Part shown: piece after piece, positions 936-33,238 of the stretch
Numbering within the stretch: the stretch's first letter is position 1
How the letters are laid out: every line of letters starts with the position of its first letter
Made by a program: the position numbers and the translations under genes
The notes under the pieces: model-generated
What the model saw: the letters and a program-made list of their open reading frames with translations, nothing else
Databases searched by the model: none
Told to the model about the DNA's origin: nothing
Origin: Octopus bimaculoides
Taxonomy: Eukaryota
Length of the DNA stretch: 35,926 nucleotides
NCBI RefSeq assembly: GCF_001194135.2
Contig: NC_068987.1
Span: 25,768,222-25,804,147, forward strand
Direction of reading: 5' to 3'

Positions 936-1578
936 NNNNNNNNNNNNNNNNNNNNNNNNNNNNNNNNNNNNNNNNNNNNNNNNNNNNNNNNNNNNNNNNN
1001 NNNNNNNNNNNNNNNNNNNNNNNNNNNNNNNNNNNNNNNNNNNNNNNNNNNNNNNNNNNNNNNNNNNNNNNNNNNNNNNNNNNNNNNNNNNNNNNNNNNN
1101 NNNNNNNNNNNNNNNNNNNNNNNNNNNNNNNNNNNNNNNNNNNNNNNNNNNNNNNNNNNNNNNNNNNNNNNNNNNNNNNNNNNNNNNNNNNNNNNNNNNN
1201 NNNNNNNNNNNNNNNNNNNNNNNNNNNNNNNNNNNNNNNNNNNNNNNNNNNNNNNNNNNNNNNNNNNNNNNNNNNNNNNNNNNNNNNNNNNNNNNNNNNN
1301 NNNNNNNNNNNNNNNNNNNNNNNNNNNNNNNNNNNNNNNNNNNNNNNNNNNNNNNNNNNNNNNNNNNNNNNNNNNNNNNNNNNNNNNNNNNNNNNNNNNN
1401 NNNNNNNNNNNNNNNNNNNNNNNNNNNNNNNNNNNNNNNNNNNNNNNNNNNNNNNNNNNNNNNNNNNNNNNNNNNNNNNNNNNNNNNNNNNNNNNNNNNN
1501 NNNNNNNNNNNNNNNNNNNNNNNNNNNNNNNNNNNNNNNNNNNNNNNNNNNNNNNNNNNNNNNNNNNNNNNNNNNNNN
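936..1578. other. Assembly gap (N run) between (AG)n and (TG)n microsatellites
   Basis: Continuous N; flanked by AG repeat 864-935 and TG repeat 1579-1593. Confidence 0.99.
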
Positions 1579-2129: not shown

Positions 2130-2188
2130 ACTATTCACAAATAGCAATATAAATGAAACAATCTTGAAGGACGACTTACCCAGACTAG

Positions 2189-2434
2189 GGATCTATTTTA
2201 AAACGGGGGCANNNNNNNNNNCTCTATTCAGCTGAATAGACGTCAGTGATTGGTTGAAATTACAGGAATACGACAACTTTAACATGGAATAACTTGCGAT
2301 GTACATTTTTTTGTTAAGAAGGCTAAGAGTAAAAGATGTTTTATATGACACATTCTACCAGTGTCCCAAGTTTCAAAGTGTTTCGTTAGTGTTTCGTTAA
2401 GAAAATACTGGTGCCCCCGTTTTGAAATAGATCC
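2189..2434. mobile_element. MITE with 23-bp TIR and 8-bp TSD (GG-terminal, Merlin-like)
   Basis: GGATCTATTTTAAAACGGGGGCA (2189-2211) versus reverse complement of 2412-2434, one mismatch; CAGACTAG at 2181-2188 and 2435-2442. Confidence 0.9.
2212..2221. other. 10-N assembly gap inside a MITE
   Basis: 10 N directly after the left TIR. Confidence 0.99.
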
Positions 2435-2920
2435 CAGACTAGTGCAACTGTTCCGCACATGATGTTCTACACAATTGACGAAACATGATTGCCTAACCTA
2501 GGTTTTAATCACATTGGTCTTACACTAGCTGAAATATCCCATTTGCATACGCCACGACTCAACAACTCCAGATGATCGCAGTAGTTTGCTAACTGCTGTA
2601 GTTGATCCTGGCAGTTGATAGTTTGTCTTTTCATCCGCACAGCGTCTAGTGATATCATCATTGACTTAATAAGTTCATCTGCCGAAACAGTTCACATCTA
2701 CCATGCTGCATCTCATGATTTTCAACATACTCTGGATCGAGTGTTTACATACATGCTATTTAACCCATCGCAATAGTAGTACCTGACAGGTGCTATTACT
2801 CCGGATCAGAGTAGGCCTGGGACCAATAGTGGATAAGTGGTTACATTCTCCTCAAAACCATGGAATTCTCACTACTAGATGTAACTTAAGGTCATATTCA
2901 GGAATATAAATAGATAAATA

Positions 2921-3336
2921 GGCGCAGGAGTGGCTGTGTGGTAAGTAGCTTGCTTACCAACCACATGGTTCTGGATTCATTCCTACTGCGTGGCACCTTG
3001 GGCAAGTGTCTTCTACTATAGTCTCGAGCCGACCAAAGCCTTGTGAGTGGATTTGGTAGACGGAAACTGAAAGAAGCTCGTCGTATATATGTATATATAT
3101 ATATGTGTGTGTGTATGTTTGTGTGTCTGTGTTTGTCCCCCTAGCATTGCTTGACAACCGATGCTGGTGTGTTTACGTCCCCGTAACTTAGTGGTTCGGG
3201 AAAAGAGACTGATAGAATAAGTACTAAGCTTCCAAAGAATAAGTCCTGGGGTCGATTTGCTCGACTAAAGGCGGTGCTCCAGCATGGCCACAGTCAAATG
3301 ACTGAAACAAGTAAAAGAGTAAAAAGAGTAAAGAGT
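2921..3336 (+). mobile_element. tRNA-derived SINE family B, full length
   Basis: Head GGCGCAGGAGTGGCTGTGTGGTAAG, central CACCTTGGGCAAGTGTCTT (CORE-like), internal TA/TG microsatellite, GTCGA-N5-TCGAC hairpin, (GTAAAAGA)n-type tail. Confidence 0.9.
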
Positions 3337-3655
3337 ATAAATAACGGCAGTTGAAGGAAAAGAAGTGCCAGTACTCAGAGTCTGTGGTTGTCTTTTTTCC
3401 TACTCTCCAGACTGGTCAATCTTCGCAGTTGAGACTTTTGGGGGTTTCCAGATAATTGTACTCTTAGGATGTACGAATCGAGCGAAGTGCTAAGTGCGGG
3501 GTCTACAAAGTGAAATGAAGTGACGGTGGTGTTAAGAAGACCATGTGTCGGGTGTTTTATGAGCAGGGAGTATATGCAGCTAGCTAGAGTGGTTGATGAG
3601 ACGATTCCACTGTTGCATGCGGTTTACCTGCTCATTTACACTTTAGCGTGCAGTT

Positions 3656-3834
3656 TAACCCTAACTGTAAACCCTAAATCTAAACCTAAACCCTAAACCT
3701 AATCCTAAACTCTAAATGCCATATGCTATAACCCTAACCCTAACCCTAACCCCTAACCTTAATCACTAACCCTAAACCCTACCCCTAAATATTATCCCTA
3801 ACTTCAAACCCTAAACCCTAATCCTAACCCCTAA
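3656..3834 (+). repeat. Degenerate telomere-like (CCCTAA/CCCTAAA)n interstitial array
   Basis: Multiple CCCTAA, CCCTAAA and CCCCTAA units; near-perfect TAACCC run at about 3729-3752. Confidence 0.85.
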
Positions 3835-4593
3835 GCCGTATCAGATCATTTCACAGTGTAGACTACAGATACTGCAGTAGACTGCACGCTGATGAAGCAC
3901 CTATGAGACAATGAGCGTGATCATTCAAAACCTATCTAGGAATCGTTATACAGTTAGGGAGGGGGGAATAAAGCTATATAAATTAATGAGTTGTTTCCCA
4001 TAGTTTTTTTTTGTGAGTATGGGAGACAACTCAAGACATATTTTGGTGTAACTCAGACCTTTTCAGTGTAGCATAGGTCTCTTGATATTCTCTGAATCAC
4101 TGAGTCAATTTTGGAAATAGAACTGTTTAGTGATTACGTACGTAGTTTGAATTTAGTTGATAAGCAGAAGCTGGATTTAGAGTAACATTTGTTTTTATAA
4201 GATTAAGTAAATATACGAAAGCACATATACACATACATACACGCTTGTGCCAATACATATGTACATAAATAGAAACATAAGTATCTACACACACACACGC
4301 ACACACACGTAAGTACACCAATTCATACCTGCATCCGTACATCTATAGGTACGTTCCCTGCACAAACACATCCATACCTGCGTACATACGTACTCCCAAT
4401 ATGTAAAACAGATAAAGAGAGGAATAAGCAGAAAGAAACGGGTGGGGTGAAGGTCTGGAATGGATAGAGGGTAAGGGAGTGGGGAGAGATAGTAACACTT
4501 GGACGAAGGAAATACGGCCAAATGGCTTGAGTGTGAGTCAAGAGGTCAAATTAGGGAGAAGGAACGAGAAATGTAATGTAATATATGTATTAT

Positions 4594-4976
4594 GTGGAGG
4601 CGCAATGGCCCAGTGGTTAGGGCAGCGGACTCGCGGTCATAGGATCGTGGTTTCGATTCCCAGACCGGGCGTTGTGAGTGTTTATTGAGCGAAGACACCT
4701 AAAGTGCCACGAGGCTCCAACAGGGGATGGCGGCGAACCCTGCTGTACTCTTTCACCACAACTTTCTCTCACTCTTACTTCCTGTTTCTGTTGTGCCTGT
4801 AATTCAAAGGGGCCAGCCTTGTCACACTGTGTCACGCTGAATATCTCCGAGAACTACGTTAAGGGTACACGTGTCTGTGGAGTGCTCAGCCACTTGCACG
4901 TTAATTTCACGAGCAGGCTGTTCCGTTGATCGGATCAACTGGAACCCTGGACGTCGTAAGCGACGGAGTGCCAACA
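4594..4976 (+). mobile_element. tRNA-derived SINE family A, full length
   Basis: Same head and body as 1930-2129; tail ending GACGGAGTGCCAAC shared with the 14783 and 16353 copies. Confidence 0.95.
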
Positions 4977-5865: not shown

Positions 5866-7709
5866 TGCTGAAAGAGACGAACGAGAAAGAGGTGGGAGGG
5901 AGTTTCACACCGACTTCAGCAACACCCGTCTCCCAACCGTTCTGCCGTCACCATATATGACAAGCTAACAAGTGATCAACCGGGATGGTGTACCACACTT
6001 AAATCAGTCGCTGTTGCTTCGTTACTGTGACGTTAGTTCCTGTGAATTTCTGAGACAGAGGAGGAATAGACAAAGAGAGAGGCAGGGCGAGAGAGAGAGA
6101 GGCAGGGAGAGAGGCAGGGCGAGAGAGAAAAAAAGAGAAAATAGCAACAACTTTCTATTTTTCGAGAGCTGCATTTATTTCTATCCCTATCGTTGTAGAG
6201 GGCCCCCACCCGCCATTTGAACAAGCACAAAACCTCTACTACCCTCTAAACAACCACCACCTATCCGGCACTCAACCATCCAACTAGACATCAACGCTTG
6301 CAACCCCACCCCCTCGCCACTCATACAGCGTCTCGTTTCTAAAAAGTTGGCAACAAGACTTTTCTTTCATTCATTATTAAAAGGAAGTGGACTTCGATCT
6401 AATTGGGCTGCCTTTTTAAGGCGTTTTTGTAGGGTGTAAAGGACAATTTTGAAACACCAACTCCATTTCTTCACACAAATTTTTCCACTGCCACTATTAC
6501 TACGACTGCTATCATTCTGCCTGGGAAAAGAAAGAAAGAAAAAAAAAATAGGAAAAGGAAAACGAGACGTTTAATCCAACCAACTTACACACCCCTTATA
6601 GCCTTGTGAAGTTAGCTAGTCTCGTCTGCCAGCCTGCTAGACAGACAGACAGACAGGCAGACGGTGAGATCCCCTTCCCATAAACATCAAACCAGCTGGT
6701 TCTGTAGCAAAAGTATCGCTTATCTTTCCCCGCTGGACTTACTTTTCTCTGCCTTAAACCTGCACCTGTCTTGGAGTAACGTTTCAGAAGATTTTCAAGG
6801 ATTTATTATTAATATTATTTTATTCAATTTCTTTTTTTGAAAAAAAAACAAAACAACAAAAAAACGAAGAAATGACGTGTTGTTGTTGTTGCTGCGAATC
6901 GAAAAGCCCTGGAGGTCAGTATTTATCGCACCCATATATATTATACATATGCACGCACTATTAGTAGTATTAGTGCAGGGTACTATAACTGTATTTGTTG
7001 GGAGTTTTTATTTTTTTAATTTTCACAAGATACTGCAACAGATTCTTGTATTCTGTTTTATTGCATATATGTAAGCTTTTGTGTATGTTTGTATGTATCA
7101 GATATTAAGATTATACATGTATTTTCATATTTAAATGTTCTAATCAGTTATAATTACTATTTTATTTTGATTATGATTCCAGGAGTTACGCTTATTTTAT
7201 ATATATATGTATATATAAAGTGCCAACTCTTCGTTGTTAGTATTTAAACATACACGTGACTTGTATTGATATGTGTGTGTTATAATAGTGAGAAATTCAA
7301 TACAGTGTATGTTGTATTGGTACAATTGTCGTTTTTGTTTTGTCTTTCGTAGCAAAATATGATTCTCACAAGTACAAGGCACATAAACACGGTAGGGCTG
7401 AGGAGGAGGTTTATATAACCTTTTAATCGGTGTCACTACTAAAATGACGAGTACACATTCAATTTATTTTGTGTAGTTTAAACAGTGGAGAAAAGGTAAC
7501 GCCTGTGAGGTCCTTGCAGACTAATGTGGGAAAGGGTTCAATGTCTTCCTTAAACTGAAGACTTAATCCGAATAGTTGCAACAGAATAGACTCCACTAAA
7601 TACACCTAGGGATGCTAAGGTATTAAACCAGATGAACGATTCGGTCTCTCACCCCAAATCAGGAAAGGCTGTCCAATCCCTCTGATTAATTTCTCTTTAG
7701 CTTTTTGTT

Positions 7710-7957: not shown

Positions 7958-8000
7958 TCTGATAAAGGTACACGGCTACATGCCGTGTACCTTTATCAGA
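7958..8000. repeat. Perfect inverted repeat, 19-bp arms and 5-nt loop
   Basis: TCTGATAAAGGTACACGGC-TACAT-GCCGTGTACCTTTATCAGA. Confidence 0.95.
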
Positions 8001-11391: not shown

Positions 11392-12120
11392 NNNNNNNNN
11401 NNNNNNNNNNNNNNNNNNNNNNNNNNNNNNNNNNNNNNNNNNNNNNNNNNNNNNNNNNNNNNNNNNNNNNNNNNNNNNNNNNNNNNNNNNNNNNNNNNNN
11501 NNNNNNNNNNNNNNNNNNNNNNNNNNNNNNNNNNNNNNNNNNNNNNNNNNNNNNNNNNNNNNNNNNNNNNNNNNNNNNNNNNNNNNNNNNNNNNNNNNNN
11601 NNNNNNNNNNNNNNNNNNNNNNNNNNNNNNNNNNNNNNNNNNNNNNNNNNNNNNNNNNNNNNNNNNNNNNNNNNNNNNNNNNNNNNNNNNNNNNNNNNNN
11701 NNNNNNNNNNNNNNNNNNNNNNNNNNNNNNNNNNNNNNNNNNNNNNNNNNNNNNNNNNNNNNNNNNNNNNNNNNNNNNNNNNNNNNNNNNNNNNNNNNNN
11801 NNNNNNNNNNNNNNNNNNNNNNNNNNNNNNNNNNNNNNNNNNNNNNNNNNNNNNNNNNNNNNNNNNNNNNNNNNNNNNNNNNNNNNNNNNNNNNNNNNNN
11901 NNNNNNNNNNNNNNNNNNNNNNNNNNNNNNNNNNNNNNNNNNNNNNNNNNNNNNNNNNNNNNNNNNNNNNNNNNNNNNNNNNNNNNNNNNNNNNNNNNNN
12001 NNNNNNNNNNNNNNNNNNNNNNNNNNNNNNNNNNNNNNNNNNNNNNNNNNNNNNNNNNNNNNNNNNNNNNNNNNNNNNNNNNNNNNNNNNNNNNNNNNNN
12101 NNNNNNNNNNNNNNNNNNNN
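11392..12120. other. Assembly gap (N run)
   Basis: Continuous N; truncates a SINE-B head on the left and abuts (TA)n on the right. Confidence 0.99.
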
Positions 12121-12416
12121 TATATATATATATATGTGTATATATATTACATAGGATTCTTTTGAAAGCCGTGTGGTATGTCATGCTACTTTCCCCAGAA
12201 AATCACAGGCTTCTACTCCAACACCCTACACAGCTGATTTTCTTTCACATTCTAATTCTTCCACACTAACAAGTCAGTCACATCGACTTCAATTTCGTAT
12301 TCGGTTGTTTTCATTAAATACACAAAAAGAACTTACGAATCTACTCTATATTTAATGTGATATCACGAAATTCATCCTTTTTCTCTACTTAATTCTGCAA
12401 ATCTAAAAGAGGATAT

Positions 12417-12920: not shown

Positions 12921-13193
12921 CGTACAAATTGATAAATGCAGCTGTTGAGATGCCACCGATAATGCCTTCCATAAGCACACGTTCTCAGAACTAGGGAAAT
13001 GCAATGGTGTGCTTTACACACGTTTTCCGGTGACATGAAATCAAAGAGATGAAATTCAATTTTAAACCGTAATTCAGTCATGAATTAAGTCGTTTTGTTC
13101 TGATCTCTTTCGGCGGGATCTATGTAAAGTATTCCAGTCGTTTTGTCAAAGGTAATACATACATACATATACCTTTTTACTATAATGCAAGTT

Positions 13194-13394
13194 GGCGTGC
13201 TTGTTTAATCGTTAGCACTCTAGACAAAATACTTAGCGCCATTTCTTCCAGCTTGATGTCTTAAGTTCAAATTCGGCCGAAGTCGATTTTGCTTTTTACC
13301 CTTTCGGGTCGATGAAATTAATTACTTATTGAGCGCTGGGGTTGATGTAATTGACTTAACCCTCTTCTAAAATTGCTAGACTTTTGTCAAAATT
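13194..13394 (+). mobile_element. SINE family C
   Basis: AATCGTTAGCAC...AGTTCAAATTCGGCCGAAGTCGA...GGGGTTGATGTAATTGACT. Confidence 0.8.
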
Positions 13395-13580
13395 AAACGA
13401 ACTCTAGTGAAAGCCGCCGAGTATGTAACAAATACTCCTTCGCTTATTGTGATCGCTTGGCAACACTGTGACACTGTCACTAGTAAAACCAATTGTCCTA
13501 AATATCGTTCATACAGTTTTGAAGCATAAGACATTAGTTCTAGACTTAGGAAGTAACGTCCTCTAGATAGCAGAAAATGT

Positions 13581-13625
13581 GGATCTTTTCAATCTCAGTC
13601 ACAGTGACTGAGATTGAAAAGATCC
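13581..13625. mobile_element. 45-bp perfect hairpin element with 8-bp TSD (minimal MITE)
   Basis: GGATCTTTTCAATCTCAGTCAC-A-GTGACTGAGATTGAAAAGATCC; GAAAATGT at 13573-13580 and 13626-13633. Confidence 0.88.
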
Positions 13626-13920
13626 GAAAATGTCATGGAAGCTCTATAACGGACGCTGAATGTGTAGACAGGTCGTAATTTTTCTTAGAAACGATATAAA
13701 TTGAATTGGAATTGAATATAAGATTGTATTATCAGTGAGCAGAAATAGGAAATATGATGCGCCAAAGTCCAAAACATTTATCATATAAGACCCCTTTATC
13801 TTTGATAAGTCTCTAAACAAAATTGATGCTGATTTTAAATTATTTTAAAACTTATTCAACACTATGGTGAAGAGAAAGGAATTATACGGATGAGAACTTT
13901 ATTTTGTCTAATAGAAAAAA

Positions 13921-14150
13921 GGCGGCGGGCTGGCAGAATCGTTAGGACATCGGACGAAATGCTTAGTGGAACTTCACCTGTCTTTACGCTCTGAGTTCAA
14001 ATTCCGCCGAGGTCAACTTTGCCTTTTAACCTTCTGAATTGATAAAATAAGTAACAGTTGAGCAATGGAATCGATGCAATGGAATCGATGCAATCGACTT
14101 ACCCCTACCCCGAACATACTGGCCTTGTGCCAAAATTGGAAACCATTAAT
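13921..14150 (+). mobile_element. SINE family C, full length
   Basis: GGCGGCGGGCTGGCAGAATCGTTAG (A-box-like), GAGTTCAAATTCC (B-box-like), 3' ATCGAT-GCA-ATCGAC; internal 14-bp duplication. Confidence 0.88.
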
Positions 14151-14782
14151 AAAGGGAGAGAGAGAGGTGCAAAAAGTTTTGACTGATAATTGTGTAGGGT
14201 TTGGTAATATGTCAATTTGAATACGTCAATTTGAATACCATTGAGTTAAACAACTCTAGTGATCCTAACAATAAAAGGCACAATATCTAACTTGGAACCG
14301 AAAAACTGTATTTTAGTGCCAAAATATCGTTGTGTATATGCTTGCGTAGACACATGCACAGAGACAATGTTTAATCTTGTATATAGCTGGTACCTTCCTC
14401 TATTCTTGCTCGTGGGAATTTCATATGCACATTTCTTCATCACATTTCGTCAGCCTGTGAAACTTCGAGTTGCAGCTCAAATGTTATCAGCTGAATACTA
14501 AAAATATTAAGTATTTTTCCTTCCGTTTACGAAACGAATCATATATAAGCAGATGTATTATATAGTAATTATATAATTTATGCAATTAACTAGCTGTTTA
14601 GTTTCCTTTTTACTAATTGCTAAATGGCAAACATGGTCCTATATCACGAGAGACTGAGTAATCTACATCTCAGATTAATCTTCTTGTCACACTATTTCCT
14701 TTTTACCAGAAAGAATTCTCAAACCATGAGACATTATACTGATACTTGGTTTTTCGTTTCTGTCACATTATTATTGCCAGAA

Positions 14783-15176
14783 GTGGAGGCGCAATGGCCC
14801 AGTGGTTAGGGCAGCGGACTCGCGGTCATAGGATCGCGGTTTCGATTCCCAGATCGGGCGTTGTGAGTGTTTATTGAGCGAAAACACCTAAAGCTCCACG
14901 AGGCTCCGGCAGAGGATGGTGGCGAACCCTGCTGTACTCTTCCACCACAACTTTCTCTCACTCTTTCATCCTGTTTCTGTTGTACCTGTAATTCAAAGGG
15001 TCAGCCTTGTCACACTGTGTCACGCTGAATATCCCCGAGAACTACGTTAAGGGTACACGTGTCTGTGGAGTGCTCAGCCACTTGCGCGTTAATTTGACGA
15101 GCAGGCTGTTCCATTGATCGGATCAATTGGAACCCTCGACGTCGTAAGCGACGGAATGCCAACAACAACAACAAAC
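14783..15176 (+). mobile_element. SINE family A, full length with (AAC)n tail
   Basis: TSD TATTGCCAGAA (14772-14782) / TATTGGCAGAA (15177-15187). Confidence 0.95.
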
Positions 15177-15815: not shown

Positions 15816-16352
15816 CACTGTTATTATTAATACGTTTTAGATGTTATCTTATCTGGTCGAGTTTTTTTTAGAACGATAACTAAACTGACTTCCTGTTTCC
15901 ATCAAAATCAATAAAAGTAAGATACGGACGCGTCGTCCTCATAGTCACTATCATTGCCATCGTCTTCATCATTGTCAGTATCCTCACCAATATCGTTGCC
16001 CTTCATCATTATTATCATGTTTATCATGCGATGTTTATCGAAGTATTAAATATTTTAATGTTTGTACCATACCATTACATTTATAACTATTATTGAGTAA
16101 ACTGGCGAGAGGGAACCTCTACGTGATCATTCGACCTTCTAGTAATATCAGCCAGTTCTCTCTCTCAAATTACGCCCTAACGTCTTAAAAAATAAAAGGA
16201 AAGGGCAAACGTATTATAGTCCTATGCCTTCAAAAAAAAAAGTGGGGGCGGGAGAAAGGGTTTTCGCTTTTGCTCATAGGCCTGTTCGATTCAGCTGTCT
16301 TGGGGCTGTACTACAACAGCAAATTGATTTATTATTGTTTGTTCAAGAGACA

Positions 16353-16696
16353 GTGGAAGCGCAATGGCCCAGTGGTTAGGGCAGCGGACTCGCGGTCGTA
16401 GGATCGCGGTTTCGATTCCCAGATCGGGCGTTGTGAGTGTTTACTGAGCGAAAACACCTAAAGCTCCACAAGGCTCCGGCAGGGAATGGTTGCGAACCCT
16501 GCTGTACACTTTCACCACAACTTTCTCTCACTCTTTCTTCTTGTTTCTGTTGTACCTGTATTTCAAAGGACCAGCCTTGTCACACTCTGTGTCACGCTGA
16601 ATCTCCCCGAGAACTACGTTAATTTCACGAGCAGGCTGCTCCGTTGATCGGATCAACTGGAGCCCTCGTCGTCGTAACCGACGGAGTGCCAACACA
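16353..16696 (+). mobile_element. SINE family A with 42-bp internal deletion
   Basis: Perfect 11-bp TSD TTCAAGAGACA (16342-16352, 16697-16707). Confidence 0.95.
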
Positions 16697-16735: not shown

Positions 16736-16893
16736 AATGGGGCGAGTTCTGAGTTGGGATTCCGCCGAGGTCGACTTTGCCTTTCATCTTTTCAGGGTCG
16801 ATAAAATAAGTACCAGCTGAGCACTGGAGTTGATATATTCAGCTTATCCCCTCCCCCACTTTGCTGGCCTTGTGTCAAAATTTCAAGCCAGTG
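16736..16893 (+). mobile_element. 5'-truncated SINE family C
   Basis: Perfect 14-bp TSD TGAGTGGTGTTGGC (16722-16735, 16894-16907). Confidence 0.88.
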
Positions 16894-17318
16894 TGAGTGG
16901 TGTTGGCTGAGTTTAGATTTTCTGTGTCAGTCAAACAATATGGAATAGAGAGTAGGGAAAATTACTTTTGGGCGCTCTCTGCATGGAACCCAAAGTTTCA
17001 ATATTGGTGTTAACATACGTAATGTAATGAATGGACCAGTAAATCGTAACTTTTAGTTACGATTTACTAGTTCATTACATTACATCCATGGTGCGAAAGA
17101 ATCATTATTTTGCTTGTCTATTCTGGCTAAGAAAAGCAAAGTGGGGCAGCTCTGAAATTTTAATTAAAGATAAAAATAGAGTATGAGCAATGCCCTAGGA
17201 AGTAATATACCGTTTAAATTATGCAAATTGTATATACGGATTCGGAGCCTAATTTATACTTGTGGGAGACAGAGTGGAAATTTTGATGTTCAAGTATTAA
17301 GTTGTGTTATATATTAAT

Positions 17319-20780: not shown

Positions 20781-20985
20781 GGCGGCGAGCTGGGCGAAAT
20801 ACTTAGCGGTATTTCGTCTGCCGCTACATTTTTGAGTTCAAATTCCGCCGAGGTCGACTTTGCCTTTCATCCTCTTGAGGTTGATAAATTAAGTACCAAT
20901 TGCGTACTGGGTCGATCTAATCGACTGGCCCCTCTCTCCAAAAATTTCGAGGCTTGTGCCTAAAGTAAAAAAGAATATTTTTCTA
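20781..20985 (+). mobile_element. SINE family C
   Basis: GGCGGCGAGCTGG...GAGTTCAAATTCCGCCGAGGTCGACTTTGCC...GTCGATCTAATCGAC. Confidence 0.92.
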
Positions 20986-25178: not shown

Positions 25179-27294
25179 TACATATAGAAGGATTTTCAAA
25201 GCCATAAATATTGTACGCGCTTAAAAACCCGCAAAGCCCCCTCTCAAAAGCTTTAAGGAAATAGAAAATTAAGAGTTGGACAATACAACGTCATCCAGTA
25301 AAAAAAAAAACAACAAAAAAAACAATGTCGTTTTAAAAACAGGGAATATATGTATTTTAGCTTAAGAACTCGGATCATAGATCACAAAAACCGAAAAAAT
25401 AACAAAACAATAATAAATAAATGGCTACTTGAAATTCCAAACTACCACCTGCGCCTGATGAATAAGGGAAAGGCCAGTGGAAAAGCTGAATTTCTTTCAC
25501 AACAAACATTTATATATGTTTTGTAGTATTGGATGGTGACGTGCAATCAGCTCTCGACGGATGTGCAAAGTGCGATTGCATTTAGCCAGATGTTCACACT
25601 TGTTCAGACGCATTCTTTTTTGATAGCTTTTGTGACAGACAATAGAACTTTAACCATTCTACAGTTAGCCACATGACTAAGAATTCTTTATCACCTTCAA
25701 TCAATATTGGAAATCGCCGAAATATTAGATAACTTAAACCCTAATGTTTGCGATGTCAACGGATCTCAAAATTAGTCAATTAATTAAAAAAAAAAAACTA
25801 TGCTCCATGTAATCGTTTATTTTAGGGACGAGACAGTCGTCAAAACGCAATCAGATTATAACCATCTTAAAATAAATATATGGACACCTTGGAGATTGTA
25901 ACCCACTGATAGAAAAAAAATGCCGATATGGTCATGGTTGGAACGCCTTTCGAAATAGGTGTGCTACCAGTTTCCGCCGCAAAATAGAGACAACGGTATC
26001 TCATCGGAGAAATGAACACAGCGAGGTGGAGTAGCTACCGCTGCGAGTGTTGCAAGTAATTCACCGCGGCAAGGTCATCGTGGTCATTACCACGGGGCGC
26101 GGCTGAGATCCCCATTTATTCTGGGGTGTGTGGCACATCACCTCCTCCTCCATCATCCGCTGCTTTACTCCCTCATCTTTTTCGTTTTCTTTTCTTTTCT
26201 CTCTTCTTTCCTTCTTTTCTTTTTTCTTTGCATTTAAATGTTCTTATAAAATAAAAACGTTACAGTAATATGTACCCCGAATAAAATCAATTGAGAATAT
26301 TGCCTGTGATGTATAAACAGCGAATCCAAAAACGCGGTCTTCGACACTTACAAGGCTTTGCCACATTGAAGTGGATCTGGTGTAGAGGGCTTTTTCTAAG
26401 AGTTGCCTTCTCAAGCACCATGTAAAAGTAAATCTTTCAGCAAGCACCGAAAAGTATGTCTGTGCATTTATGTAGCTGCTGTTGTTACTGATAATATTAT
26501 TGTTACTGCTGTTGATATCAAACTCGAATCAACTGACAATTTGCCAAACATCCTATCTAAGTTATTTTATCATCCACAAGTTTTCCTTTCTGCCTTGTGT
26601 ATATTTTTCTTTCGGTCTGTATCAAAAGTTAACTTCTTTCTCCTATACCCCTTCAATTTAGCCTCAAAACATTATTGGCCATGGGTTGAAAAAAAAAAGC
26701 AGCAACGAAGATGCGGCTGAGCTGATAATAAAAAAGAAATTAAATAAAAAATAAAGGAATGAATAGAAAATATCATTTTTAAATGCCAACAATTTCTTGG
26801 AAAAGTGGAGTTAAGGGAATCACTCCATTCGGCCAGAATTCCTTCCTGTATAACTGAATGGTAAAAACAGATGAGTGCTGTTACAGCTGCTGTTGCTACC
26901 ACTACTTCCATTATCATCATTATTATCATCATCATCATCTCCGTGGTGGAGATGATGATGATGATAATAATCTGTCTGATTATGATGATGGCGATGATGA
27001 TGAGTGCGTTATAAATAGCTCTATGAAACAGAAATAAATGGAAATATTGAAATGTGACTAGTTTGAAAATATAATAGTTTGTTTCGTTTTGTGTAATTGC
27101 AGACATTAATTGCGCGTAATGAAGTAGTAGTTTCCGTATTTCTGTGATTAAACTTGTTCGTTTTCTATGCCTCAAAGTTACAAAACATTTCTGTTGATGT
27201 AGTACAAGTAAGTTCTCAGAGACCAGTCAATATCGAAGGGACCTATCAAGCAAAGACGATCCTATCGTGATCATCCTGTCCTTTTCATACCTTT

Positions 27295-31111: not shown

Positions 31112-31420
31112 TGTAGCAGAGTTAGAATTTATAATTAACAGCATTTCGTCCGCTTTCACGTTCTGAGTTCAAATTCTGTCAAGGTTGACTTTGCCTTTCA
31201 TTTTTTTTCTGGGTCAATGAAATAAGTACCAATCGAGCACTTTGGGCGATGTAATCGACTAGCCCCCACTCCGAAAATTTCAGTCCTTATTTCTTTAGTA
31301 GAGAGGATTATTATAAAGGCGGCAAGTTGGCAGAATAATTTGTATGCCGAACAACATGCTTAGCGGCATATCGTCTGCCGTTACGTTCTGAGTTCAAACA
31401 CCGCCAAGGTCGACTTCATC
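31112..31420 (+). mobile_element. Two tandem SINE-C copies (31112-31314 and 5' half 31318-31420)
   Basis: Both carry ACGTTCTGAGTTCAAA. Confidence 0.8.
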
Positions 31421-32370: not shown

Positions 32371-33238
32371 CTTATACACCTATGTGATCGGCTGCTCTGC
32401 CTGACATGCTTATAAAGACCCCATTTTTACTTTCGTTTAAAAGATATTTGGGAATATTGCTTTTCAAGCCGGCTTTTTTCTTGAAAGTGCTAACGTGGAT
32501 GTTATTTTAAAGATAGCCATATAATCGTGCTATCTTAAGAGATAACGTCCCTGTAACATTTCCTCTTAAACCGGACTAAATAAAATAAAATTAAAAAAAC
32601 TGTTAATAAAGAGAAAAAAAATGCCTTTCATTGCCAACTTCCATCAAGCAGTTTCCTATGAATGCTATGCACAAACATATATATACATACATACATGTGT
32701 GTGTGTGTGTGTGTGTGTGTACACAAATAAGTATGTACATACATTATAAGAGGTTGAAGTTTCGCCAAAGAAGCTTATCAAACAATTTGTTTGATAAGCT
32801 TCTTCGAAGTCACAGTCAAGTTGCCTTTATAGAATAAATAAATATTGTATTCTGCATCGTGTGTTCAGTCCTTTCTTTAATTAATGTCTGTTGTTTTTAG
32901 ATATTTAGAGCACATCATTATTATTATAATACATATGTAAATATTATACATACACAAGAACGAATGCGTACGCGCATGTTACACATACACTCGTGTGCGT
33001 ATGTAACATTTGGGTGCTCAGGCACACGCACATATGTGTGTGTATATATGCGAAACGATAACGTACCGACTGTACTTGTCATATCTCGTGGCATATTCTT
33101 TTTCTCAACCAGTAATCATATATGATTGCCCGTTCCACTTTAAAGAAACACAAATACTTTACACAGATGCACGTATCTTATCTCCAAATGAAGTCGGAGA
33201 TTTATATATTTTCTAAGCTTTTTTTACAGGCGTCCAAA

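What the first reader, a model, noticed from the sequence alone, without database searches (positions are those of the whole stretch)
13573..13633. A 45-bp transposon made only of two TIRs: perfect hairpin with a perfect 8-bp TSD
Seen: GAAAATGT-[GGATCTTTTCAATCTCAGTCAC-A-GTGACTGAGATTGAAAAGATCC]-GAAAATGT. The arms are 22 bp without mismatch, the loop is 1 nt, and the direct repeat abuts both ends exactly. The termini GGATCT...AGATCC and the TSD length match the otherwise unrelated 246-bp MITE at 2189-2434. Known: GG ends with an 8-bp TSD are Merlin hallmarks, and MITEs are normally well over 50 bp. Inference: either a GGAT-terminal family transposes as a bare TIR pair, or a longer MITE collapsed after insertion. 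Either way it leaves a cruciform-prone DNA site and a 22-bp RNA duplex of siRNA/ADAR size. This is the best candidate for something undescribed in the window.
Basis: partly seen in the sequence, partly recalled or inferred. Interest (0 to 1): 0.75.

Follow-up and report, generated by a model that had tools for sequence, protein, structure and literature searches.

The report
Two-end stub of an octopus transposon
A 45-base perfect hairpin flanked by an exact 8-base duplication is real and consists of just the two end-repeats of a Merlin-type octopus transposon; it is most likely a relic left in place after a longer element lost its interior, not a new kind of 45-base jumping gene.

Summary
GAAAATGT lies at 13573-13580 and 13626-13633. 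Between them are 22-nt arms GGATCTTTTCAATCTCAGTCAC with no mismatch around one central A (13603). Chance cannot produce this.

New context: the window is Octopus DNA, probably O. bimaculoides. GGATCT ends with 8-bp duplications mark a Merlin group there. The TIR of the 246-bp MITE at 2189-2434 recurs 525 bp downstream of a Merlin transposase ORF on an O. bimaculoides contig. The same contig holds a 710-bp GGATCT element with a perfect 8-bp duplication. That element is a hairpin along its whole length.

Best reading (about 0.55): a longer, probably foldback-like, Merlin MITE inserted at GAAAATGT and later lost its interior symmetrically in place. A worm-like-chain estimate makes pairing of the two ends of a 45-bp duplex about 10^37 times less likely than for a 246-bp MITE. 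This argues against a self-moving 45-mer (about 0.15).

No second copy of this 22-mer was found in 151 kb of Octopus DNA. Interest is modest.

The parts
13573..13580 (.). Left copy of the 8-bp target-site duplication, GAAAATGT
   Evidence: sequence. One search shows the repeat is exactly 8 bp and not extendable.
13581..13602 (+). Left terminal inverted repeat (arm), GGATCTTTTCAATCTCAGTCAC, 22 nt
   Evidence: The first 13 nt match the TIR of the MITE at 2189-2434 at 12 positions.
13603..13603 (.). Single central base (A/T), the only unpaired position and the junction between the two arms
   Evidence: Folding opens 3 central nt.
13604..13625 (-). Right terminal inverted repeat (arm), exact reverse complement of the left arm
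   Evidence: 0 mismatches on the minus strand.
13626..13633 (.). Right copy of the 8-bp target-site duplication, GAAAATGT
2181..2442 (+). Sister element of the same GGATCT-ended group. It is a 246-bp MITE at 2189-2434 with TIR GGATCTATTT[T/C]AAAACGGGGGCA. Its 8-bp duplication CAGACTAG lies at 2181-2188 and 2435-2442. A 10-N assembly gap at 2212-2221 sits right after the left TIR.
   Evidence: Its TIR and interior recur on O. bimaculoides contig L021 next to a Merlin ORF.

Best explanation
The 61-bp feature is what remains of one insertion by a cut-and-paste DNA transposon of an Octopus Merlin group. That group has GGATC(T) termini and makes 8-bp target duplications.

Proposed sequence of events:
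1. A longer non-autonomous element inserted at GAAAATGT and duplicated it. The element probably had halves that were inverted repeats of each other, like the 710-bp foldback found on an O. bimaculoides contig.
2. Everything between the outer 22 nt of each end was later lost in place.

The favoured route for step 2 is symmetric central deletion of an unstable palindrome. That could happen by replication bypass of a hairpin, or by cruciform or hairpin cleavage followed by end joining. The alternative route is repair of a transposase-made break in which only the protein-bound or staggered-cut end stubs survived and were joined with one extra base.

The product is an inert scar. It keeps the transposase-recognised termini and a strong hairpin potential, but it is too short for its two ends to pair, so it no longer moves.

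Shown: the structure; its kinship with Merlin-group elements; and the existence of foldback relatives.
Inferred: the former longer element at this site; the deletion route; and the immobility.
For: - The structure is exact and far beyond chance.
- Apart from simple repeats, only two TIR-plus-8-bp-duplication objects exist in the window. Both start GGATCT, and 12 of the first 13 nt match.
- GG termini and 8-9-bp duplications define Merlin, and O. bimaculoides is unusually rich in Merlin, with 191 protein hits (PMC8101967).
- The window is Octopus DNA. Its SINE and another repeat hit O. sinensis, O. vulgaris and O. bimaculoides loci at 73-92%. The interior of MITE246 is 94.6% identical to O. bimaculoides contig L021.
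- On L021 a PF12762 (DDE_Tnp_IS1595) ORF at 3223-4056 is followed at 4580-4602 by ...AAAAAGATCC. That sequence is 95% identical to the MITE246 TIR and lies in right-end orientation.
- L021 5575-6284 is a 710-bp GGATCT element with perfect TIRs of at least 26 nt and a perfect 8-bp duplication, TAACGTTG.
- That 710-bp element is a foldback along its whole length: nested inverted repeats, DNA hairpin -168.6 kcal/mol, z -23.6. Its subterminal region matches the one beside the Merlin ORF at 88%.
- Natural animal palindromes do shrink by central deletions, including symmetric ones. Human PATRR11 is the example (PMC3197554).
- MITEs arise from longer elements by abortive gap repair and microhomology joining (PMC3814204).
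- P transposase leaves 17-nt stubs of each TIR at the donor site (PMC7776569).
- A worm-like-chain estimate gives the local concentration of one end near the other as 3e-45 M at 45 bp, 1e-18 M at 80 bp and 3.5e-8 M at 246 bp. The equation is the one quoted in PMC3687335, and it reproduced that paper's value at 1287 bp.
- No second copy of the 22-mer with up to 5 mismatches occurs in 151 kb of Octopus DNA.
Against: - No longer element carrying this exact TIR was found, so the supposed parent is hypothetical.
- The perfectly symmetric 22/22 outcome with a 1-nt centre is not what random deletion end points would give. It needs a symmetric mechanism, which is inferred and not shown.
- The 22-nt arms are about the length of a complete TIR in this group (23 nt or more, and 26 nt or more, in the sisters). 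That is also what a minimal functional element would keep.
- Made1 (80 bp) shows that nearly TIR-only MITEs can amplify despite being shorter than the DNA persistence length. The stiffness argument is therefore not absolute.
- 151 kb is a tiny sample of a genome of several Gb. Absence of further copies says little.
- The metagenome and prokaryote collections hold no DNA of this host (control), so their negative results are uninformative.
- Reads, alleles and orthologous sites could not be examined.
Confidence: 0.55

Rival explanations
1. A bare pair of TIRs that transposes as such. On this reading a 45-bp Merlin MITE family is mobilised in trans by a Merlin transposase, and this copy is a recent insertion.
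For: - The 8-bp duplication and the arms are perfect, as for a young insertion.
- The arms are about one full TIR long for this group.
- There is a precedent in Made1: 80 bp, two 37-bp TIRs plus 6 bp, thousands of copies (PMC1784062).
- MITE finders usually ignore anything under 50 bp, so such a family could have gone unnoticed (inference).
- Meeting one in a single 36-kb window hints that such objects are not very rare (weak inference).
Against: - The two ends of a 45-bp duplex are about 15 nm apart and point away from each other.
- The worm-like-chain estimate of their mutual local concentration is about 10^37 times lower than for a 246-bp MITE, and about 10^26 times lower than for an 80-bp element.
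- No second copy was found in 151 kb of Octopus DNA.
- No other TIR-only mini-element of any GGATC type was seen in that DNA.
Confidence: 0.15
2. An excision scar made by a long staggered cut. On this reading the Merlin-group transposase cuts the non-transferred strand about 22-23 nt inside each end, as P transposase does at 17 nt. Each excision then leaves both TIR stubs between the intact duplications, joined by end joining. This is a specific sub-case of an in-place relic.
For: - The architecture is the same as P-element imprecise-excision scars. P transposase makes 17-nt staggered cuts inside its 31-bp repeats (PMC7776569).
- A fixed cut position explains the exact 22/22 symmetry. The single central base fits a 1-nt overlap or a 1-nt addition (inference).
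Against: - Nothing is known here about Merlin cleavage chemistry.
- No other such scar was seen in 151 kb.
- Short palindromes between apparent 8-bp repeats elsewhere in the window turned out to be parts of longer tandem duplications.
Confidence: 0.12
3. An assembly artefact. On this reading a longer MITE at this site was collapsed to its two TIRs by the short-read assembler or its gap closer.
For: - The assembly has trouble at TIRs. A 10-N gap sits directly after the left TIR of the MITE at 2189-2434, and there is a 10-N gap on contig L021 from the O. bimaculoides assembly.
- The window holds 5 perfect short palindromes in 36 kb, against 2 in 115 kb of other Octopus loci, most of them from the O. 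sinensis and O. vulgaris assemblies.
Against: - Where this assembler failed at a TIR it left Ns, not a fusion.
- The arms are only 22 nt, shorter than usual k-mers. The centre-spanning words must therefore exist in reads for a de Bruijn assembler to write them (inference).
- An artefact would not be expected to end exactly at a symmetric point with a single central base.
Confidence: 0.08
4. A palindrome unrelated to transposons, for example fold-back (snap-back) synthesis during break repair, with a chance flanking repeat.
For: The window contains other perfect short palindromes without flanking repeats, at 7958-8000, 17038-17068, 32768-32804 and 26919-26971. Some palindrome-forming process may therefore act here.
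Against: - Neither arm has a source copy nearby.
- An exact 8-bp abutting direct repeat and termini matching a Merlin MITE at 12 of 13 nt are not expected from such a process.
Confidence: 0.03

Closest known systems
Merlin superfamily MITEs (DDE_Tnp_IS1595 / IS1016-related transposons)
   Same: Termini start with 5'-GG and the target duplication is 8 bp (PMC8101967). The sister TIR recurs beside a PF12762 ORF in O. bimaculoides.
   Different: Published Merlin TIRs are 24-462 bp, with some families at 23-29 bp, and elements are hundreds of bp or more. Here the arms are 22 nt and nothing lies between them. No autonomous copy with this exact TIR was found.
Made1 / MiHsmar1 (human mariner MITE)
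   Same: It is made almost only of its two TIRs (2 x 37 bp plus 6 bp). It is a near-perfect palindrome and forms stable RNA hairpins that became miR-548 genes (PMC1784062).
   Different: It belongs to Tc1/mariner with a TA duplication, is 80 bp long, and has thousands of copies proving mobility. Here the element is 45 bp, has an 8-bp duplication, and is known from one copy.
P-element imprecise-excision scars
   Same: Intact 8-bp duplications bracket stubs of both inverted repeats, giving a short palindrome. The cause is a 17-nt staggered cut inside each repeat followed by end joining (PMC7776569; scar structure from my own knowledge of the Drosophila literature).
   Different: It is a different superfamily with CATG termini and a THAP9-type transposase, and the stubs are at most 17 nt. 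Here the stubs are 22 nt with GG termini, and the cleavage chemistry is unknown.
Foldback-type elements and unstable natural palindromes (for example human PATRR11)
   Same: The whole element is a hairpin. Such palindromes shorten by central deletions, some of them symmetric (PMC3197554). A 710-bp foldback of the same GGATCT group exists.
   Different: PATRRs are not transposons, and their short variants are still more than 200 bp. A collapse down to 45 bp has not been shown for this group.
Deletion-derived MITEs made by abortive gap repair and microhomology joining (Gnome, Elf, Goblin from Ozma)
   Same: An internal deletion of a longer element keeps both ends (PMC3814204).
   Different: Those keep subterminal sequence and remain mobile families. 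Here nothing but the TIRs remains.

Membership tests
Merlin superfamily | TIRs begin with 5'-GG | tested here: met
   Both arms start GGATCT. The criterion comes from PMC8101967.
Merlin superfamily | 8- or 9-bp target-site duplication | tested here: met
   An exact, non-extendable 8-bp GAAAATGT lies on both sides.
Merlin superfamily | TIR length within the described range (24-462 bp; some families 23-29 bp) | tested here: inconclusive
   The arms are 22 nt, just under the published lower bound. The true TIR of the parent family is unknown.
Merlin superfamily | The same termini are found on a copy that encodes a DDE_Tnp_IS1595 transposase | tested here: inconclusive
   This is met in part for the sister TIR. 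L021 4580-4602 lies 525 bp downstream of a PF12762 ORF, but the left end is missing. The 45-mer's own 22-mer was not found in L021-L028.
MITE (a mobile, multi-copy non-autonomous family) | Many near-identical copies with different target duplications | tested here: inconclusive
   No second copy was found in 151 kb of Octopus DNA. That sample is far too small, and the whole genome was not available.
MITE (a mobile, multi-copy non-autonomous family) | Usual length of about 50-800 bp | tested here: not met
   The element is 45 bp between the duplications.
hAT superfamily | 8-bp duplication together with the terminal motif YARNG | tested here: not met
   The duplication length fits, but the termini read GGATC. 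The motif is from my own knowledge.
P-type excision scar | Intact 8-bp duplications enclosing stubs of both TIRs | tested here: met
   One search shows the architecture. This is a resemblance in form only.
P-type excision scar | A transposase that cuts the non-transferred strand many nt inside the element | not testable with these tools
   This needs biochemical mapping of cleavage by the Merlin-group transposase.
TIR-only palindromic MITE (Made1-like) | The element consists of two TIRs with at most a few internal bases | tested here: met
   The structure is 22 + 1 + 22 nt.

The most novel reading that the evidence does not exclude
A family of sub-50-bp, TIR-only Merlin elements that really transpose as bare end pairs. 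This would imply that the transposase can cut and integrate ends that cannot be looped together. It might do so by pairing ends in trans, by cleaving the two ends one after the other, or by sharply kinking the DNA. It would also imply that current MITE finders, with their 50-bp floor, miss a whole size class. A second novel reading is that Merlin transposases make a 22-23-nt staggered cut, as P transposase does at 17 nt, and scatter such scars.
Probability: 0.15. Interest if true: 0.7.

Novelty: new member of a known kind. Interest (0 to 1): 0.35.

Why it matters
If it is a relic, it is an ordinary though unusually clean record of how palindromic MITEs decay. It also adds a small annotation fact: Octopus genomes carry a Merlin group with GGATC(T) ends, several TIR variants and foldback derivatives.

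It would matter more in two cases. Many identical 45-mers would set a new lower size limit for DNA transposition and expose a blind spot of MITE-finding software. Many scars with variable centres would give the first hint about Merlin cleavage chemistry. Perfect 22-bp hairpins in transcribed regions would also be candidate substrates for small-RNA or editing pathways in cephalopods, but nothing here shows that.

Tried and rejected
No reads, alleles, long-read check or RNA evidence could be obtained.
2. Exact look-ups of window ORFs next to the site found nothing on record: 58, 52, 106 and 150 aa.
3. A protein-database search with a composite of all open frames flanking and crossing the palindrome gave no hit at E <= 10. 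A local phmmer test showed that a perfect match to the 14-aa peptide through the hairpin would score only E of about 250 to 9e4. That route cannot detect other copies.
4. The 22-mer is absent from metagenome contigs and genome contigs. A control with the window's abundant SINE core found only high-GC bacterial chance matches, so those collections hold no host DNA and the negatives mean nothing.
5. There is no match to plasmids or phages, so it is not a vector-like sequence. No paper prints these TIRs or the SINE core.
6. I looked for shorter scars, meaning 8-bp repeats around small palindromes. Four candidates vanished once the repeat had to be exactly 8 bp; they are parts of longer tandem duplications.
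7. No paralogous empty site exists in the window.
8. The window gave no tRNA genes, no Rfam families, and no Pfam domains in the ten most protein-like open frames.
9. Logan contigs L026 and L027, and the O. sinensis and O. vulgaris Merlin loci L022-L025 and L028, gave no clean GGATCT TIR pairs. Only the ORF region is conserved with L021.
10. The idea that the centre GTCAC-A-GTGAC reveals a microhomology junction was dropped. The centre of any palindrome is palindromic by definition.

Full report
**Observation**

The sequence at 13573-13633 is exactly as described. It reads GAAAATGT, then GGATCTTTTCAATCTCAGTCAC, one A, the exact reverse complement of the 22-mer, then GAAAATGT again.

- The 22-mer has no other match in the window with up to 3 mismatches, and none in 100 shuffles.
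- The direct repeat is exactly 8 bp.
- I scanned the whole window for perfect 8-bp direct repeats that abut inverted termini. Apart from simple repeats, only this object and the 246-bp MITE at 2189-2434 came up, and both begin GGATCT.
- With one 1-nt gap, 12 of the first 13 nt of the two TIRs agree. Among 2,649 other GG-started positions in the window, none reaches 12.
- The object is therefore real, not chance, and related by its termini to the MITE.
- Predicted hairpin energies are -22.8 kcal/mol (DNA) and -34.1 kcal/mol (RNA).

**Where it comes from**

The window shows no coding, tRNA or Rfam signal. It is full of a tRNA-like SINE and microsatellites.

A paper on Merlin distribution reports 191 Merlin protein hits in Octopus bimaculoides (PMC8101967). 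I took one of those proteins from its supplement and searched the protein collection with it. I then fetched the genomic loci of the Octopus hits.

- The window's SINE and a second repeat match these O. sinensis, O. vulgaris and O. bimaculoides loci at 73-92%.
- The interior of the 246-bp MITE matches O. bimaculoides contig L021 at 94.6%.
- The window is therefore Octopus DNA, probably O. bimaculoides. That assembly shows the same 10-N gap style.

**Family**

Merlin elements are defined by TIRs that start GG and by 8-9-bp duplications (PMC8101967). Contig L021 gives three relevant findings.

- A PF12762 transposase ORF at 3223-4056 is followed, 525 bp downstream, by ...TGGCCCCCGTTTTAAAAAAGATCC at 4580-4602. 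This is 95% identical to the TIR of the window's MITE and lies in right-end orientation. The left end is not on the contig, so the link is strong but incomplete.
- L021 5575-6284 is a 710-bp element with perfect TIRs GGATCTTTGGGGTTTGACGGGCAACA and a perfect 8-bp duplication TAACGTTG.
- That element's subterminal sequence matches the one beside the ORF at 88%.

GGATC(T) ends plus 8-bp duplications thus mark an Octopus Merlin group with several TIR variants. The 45-mer carries a further variant. Its own 22-mer was not found again in 151 kb of Octopus DNA.

**How the 45-mer arose**

The 710-bp sister element is a foldback. Nested inverted repeats run along its whole length, and it folds as one hairpin of -168.6 kcal/mol (z -23.6).

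Long palindromes are unstable and lose their centres. In the human PATRR11, both symmetric and asymmetric short variants arise this way (PMC3197554). The routes proposed in the literature are hairpin or cruciform cleavage with end joining, and centre-break revision (PMC3300023).

A symmetric central deletion of a foldback MITE keeps the two termini and the duplication and yields a shorter perfect palindrome. That is what is seen here.

A second in-place route is repair after transposase cutting.
- MITEs are known to arise by abortive gap repair and microhomology joining (PMC3814204).
- P transposase leaves 17-nt stubs of each repeat at the donor site (PMC7776569). These give palindromic scars between intact 8-bp duplications.

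I favour an in-place relic (about 0.55 to 0.6 over all routes). Central deletion of a foldback parent is the most likely route. The former parent at this site and the route itself are inferred, not shown.

**Why not a mobile 45-mer**

Cut-and-paste transposases pair the two ends of an element. I used the empirical looping equation quoted in PMC3687335, which reproduced that paper's value at 1287 bp. The local concentration of one end near the other comes out as follows.

| Separation | Local concentration |
|---|---|
| 45 bp | 3e-45 M |
| 80 bp | 1e-18 M |
| 246 bp | 3.5e-8 M |

The estimate ignores protein-induced kinks. Made1, at 80 bp, did amplify (PMC1784062). I therefore keep a mobile 45-mer at about 0.15 rather than excluding it. 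What speaks for it is the perfect state of the arms and the duplication, and the fact that the arms equal about one TIR.

**Other rivals**

- Assembly collapse (about 0.08). This assembler leaves Ns at TIR boundaries rather than fusing them, and 22-nt arms are shorter than usual k-mers.
- A non-transposon palindrome (about 0.03). This does not explain the exact 8-bp repeat and the Merlin-like termini.

Many identical 45-mers with different duplications would not prove that the 45-mer moves. A transposase with a fixed staggered cut would scatter the same scars. The discriminating data are of two kinds. One is the state of the same site in other individuals and species: empty, or filled by a long element. 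The other is whether the central base is constant or variable across copies.

**Limits**

- No whole genome, no reads and no expression data were available.
- The collections that could be scanned for DNA patterns hold no host DNA.

**Verdict**

The object is real and cleanly preserved. It is a TIR-only remnant of an Octopus Merlin-group element, most probably an immobile relic. It is a new member of a known kind, and its interest is modest unless a genome-wide scan shows many copies.

Noticed in passing
window 7958-8000, 17038-17068, 32768-32804, 26919-26971: There are four further perfect short palindromes: arms of 19, 14, 18 and 24 nt with loops of 5, 3, 1 and 5 nt. None has a flanking direct repeat. 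The last is built of inverted trinucleotide repeats. That makes 5 in 36 kb, against 2 in 115 kb of other Octopus loci. The one at 7958-8000 interrupts the 3' part of a SINE copy. Its right arm loosely resembles the SINE tail, which would fit fold-back copying.
   Followed up: partly
window 2212-2221: A 10-N gap sits immediately after the left TIR of the 246-bp MITE. The assembler broke at the inner edge of the TIR, so the true TIR length and the left interior of this MITE are unknown.
   Followed up: partly
L021 5575-6284 (O. bimaculoides LGKD02092233.1): This is a 710-bp foldback element with GGATCT ends and the duplication TAACGTTG. Its centre (about 5890-6020) is made of TTAGGG-like telomere-type repeats in inverted arrangement. 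Its right arm is 94.6% identical to the interior of the window's 246-bp MITE, yet the two carry different TIRs. That suggests the ends have been exchanged between elements.
   Followed up: partly
L028 11625-11890 (O. sinensis CM016877.1): Two GGATCGACTAGTCACGACTAGCTAGC ends face each other across 102 AT-rich bp (27 nt at 100%, flanked by 46 nt at 85%). They lie about 800 bp downstream of a Merlin ORF. This is an outer-ends-inward arrangement whose meaning I did not work out.
   Followed up: no
window 13188-13368, 13918-14085, 16747-16856, 20830-20910, 31135-31272 and others: There are many diverged copies of one tRNA-like SINE. The 45-mer lies in unique sequence between two of them. A second repeat of about 380 bp occurs three times at 87-95% identity (4593-4976, 14782-15164, 16352-16694).
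   Followed up: partly
window 936-1578 and 11392-12120: Two long N runs of 643 and 729 nt are flanked by (GA)n and (TA)n/(GT)n microsatellites. They are probably scaffold gaps at simple repeats.
   Followed up: no
window 12154-12176 and L021 5792-5809: Two sites partly resemble the 45-mer's TIR. GGATTCTTTTGAAAG lies next to a gap in the window. GGATCTTTTCCCTTGAAT lies inside the 710-bp foldback and shares its first 10 nt with the TIR. Neither has a partner end, so they may be chance.
   Followed up: partly
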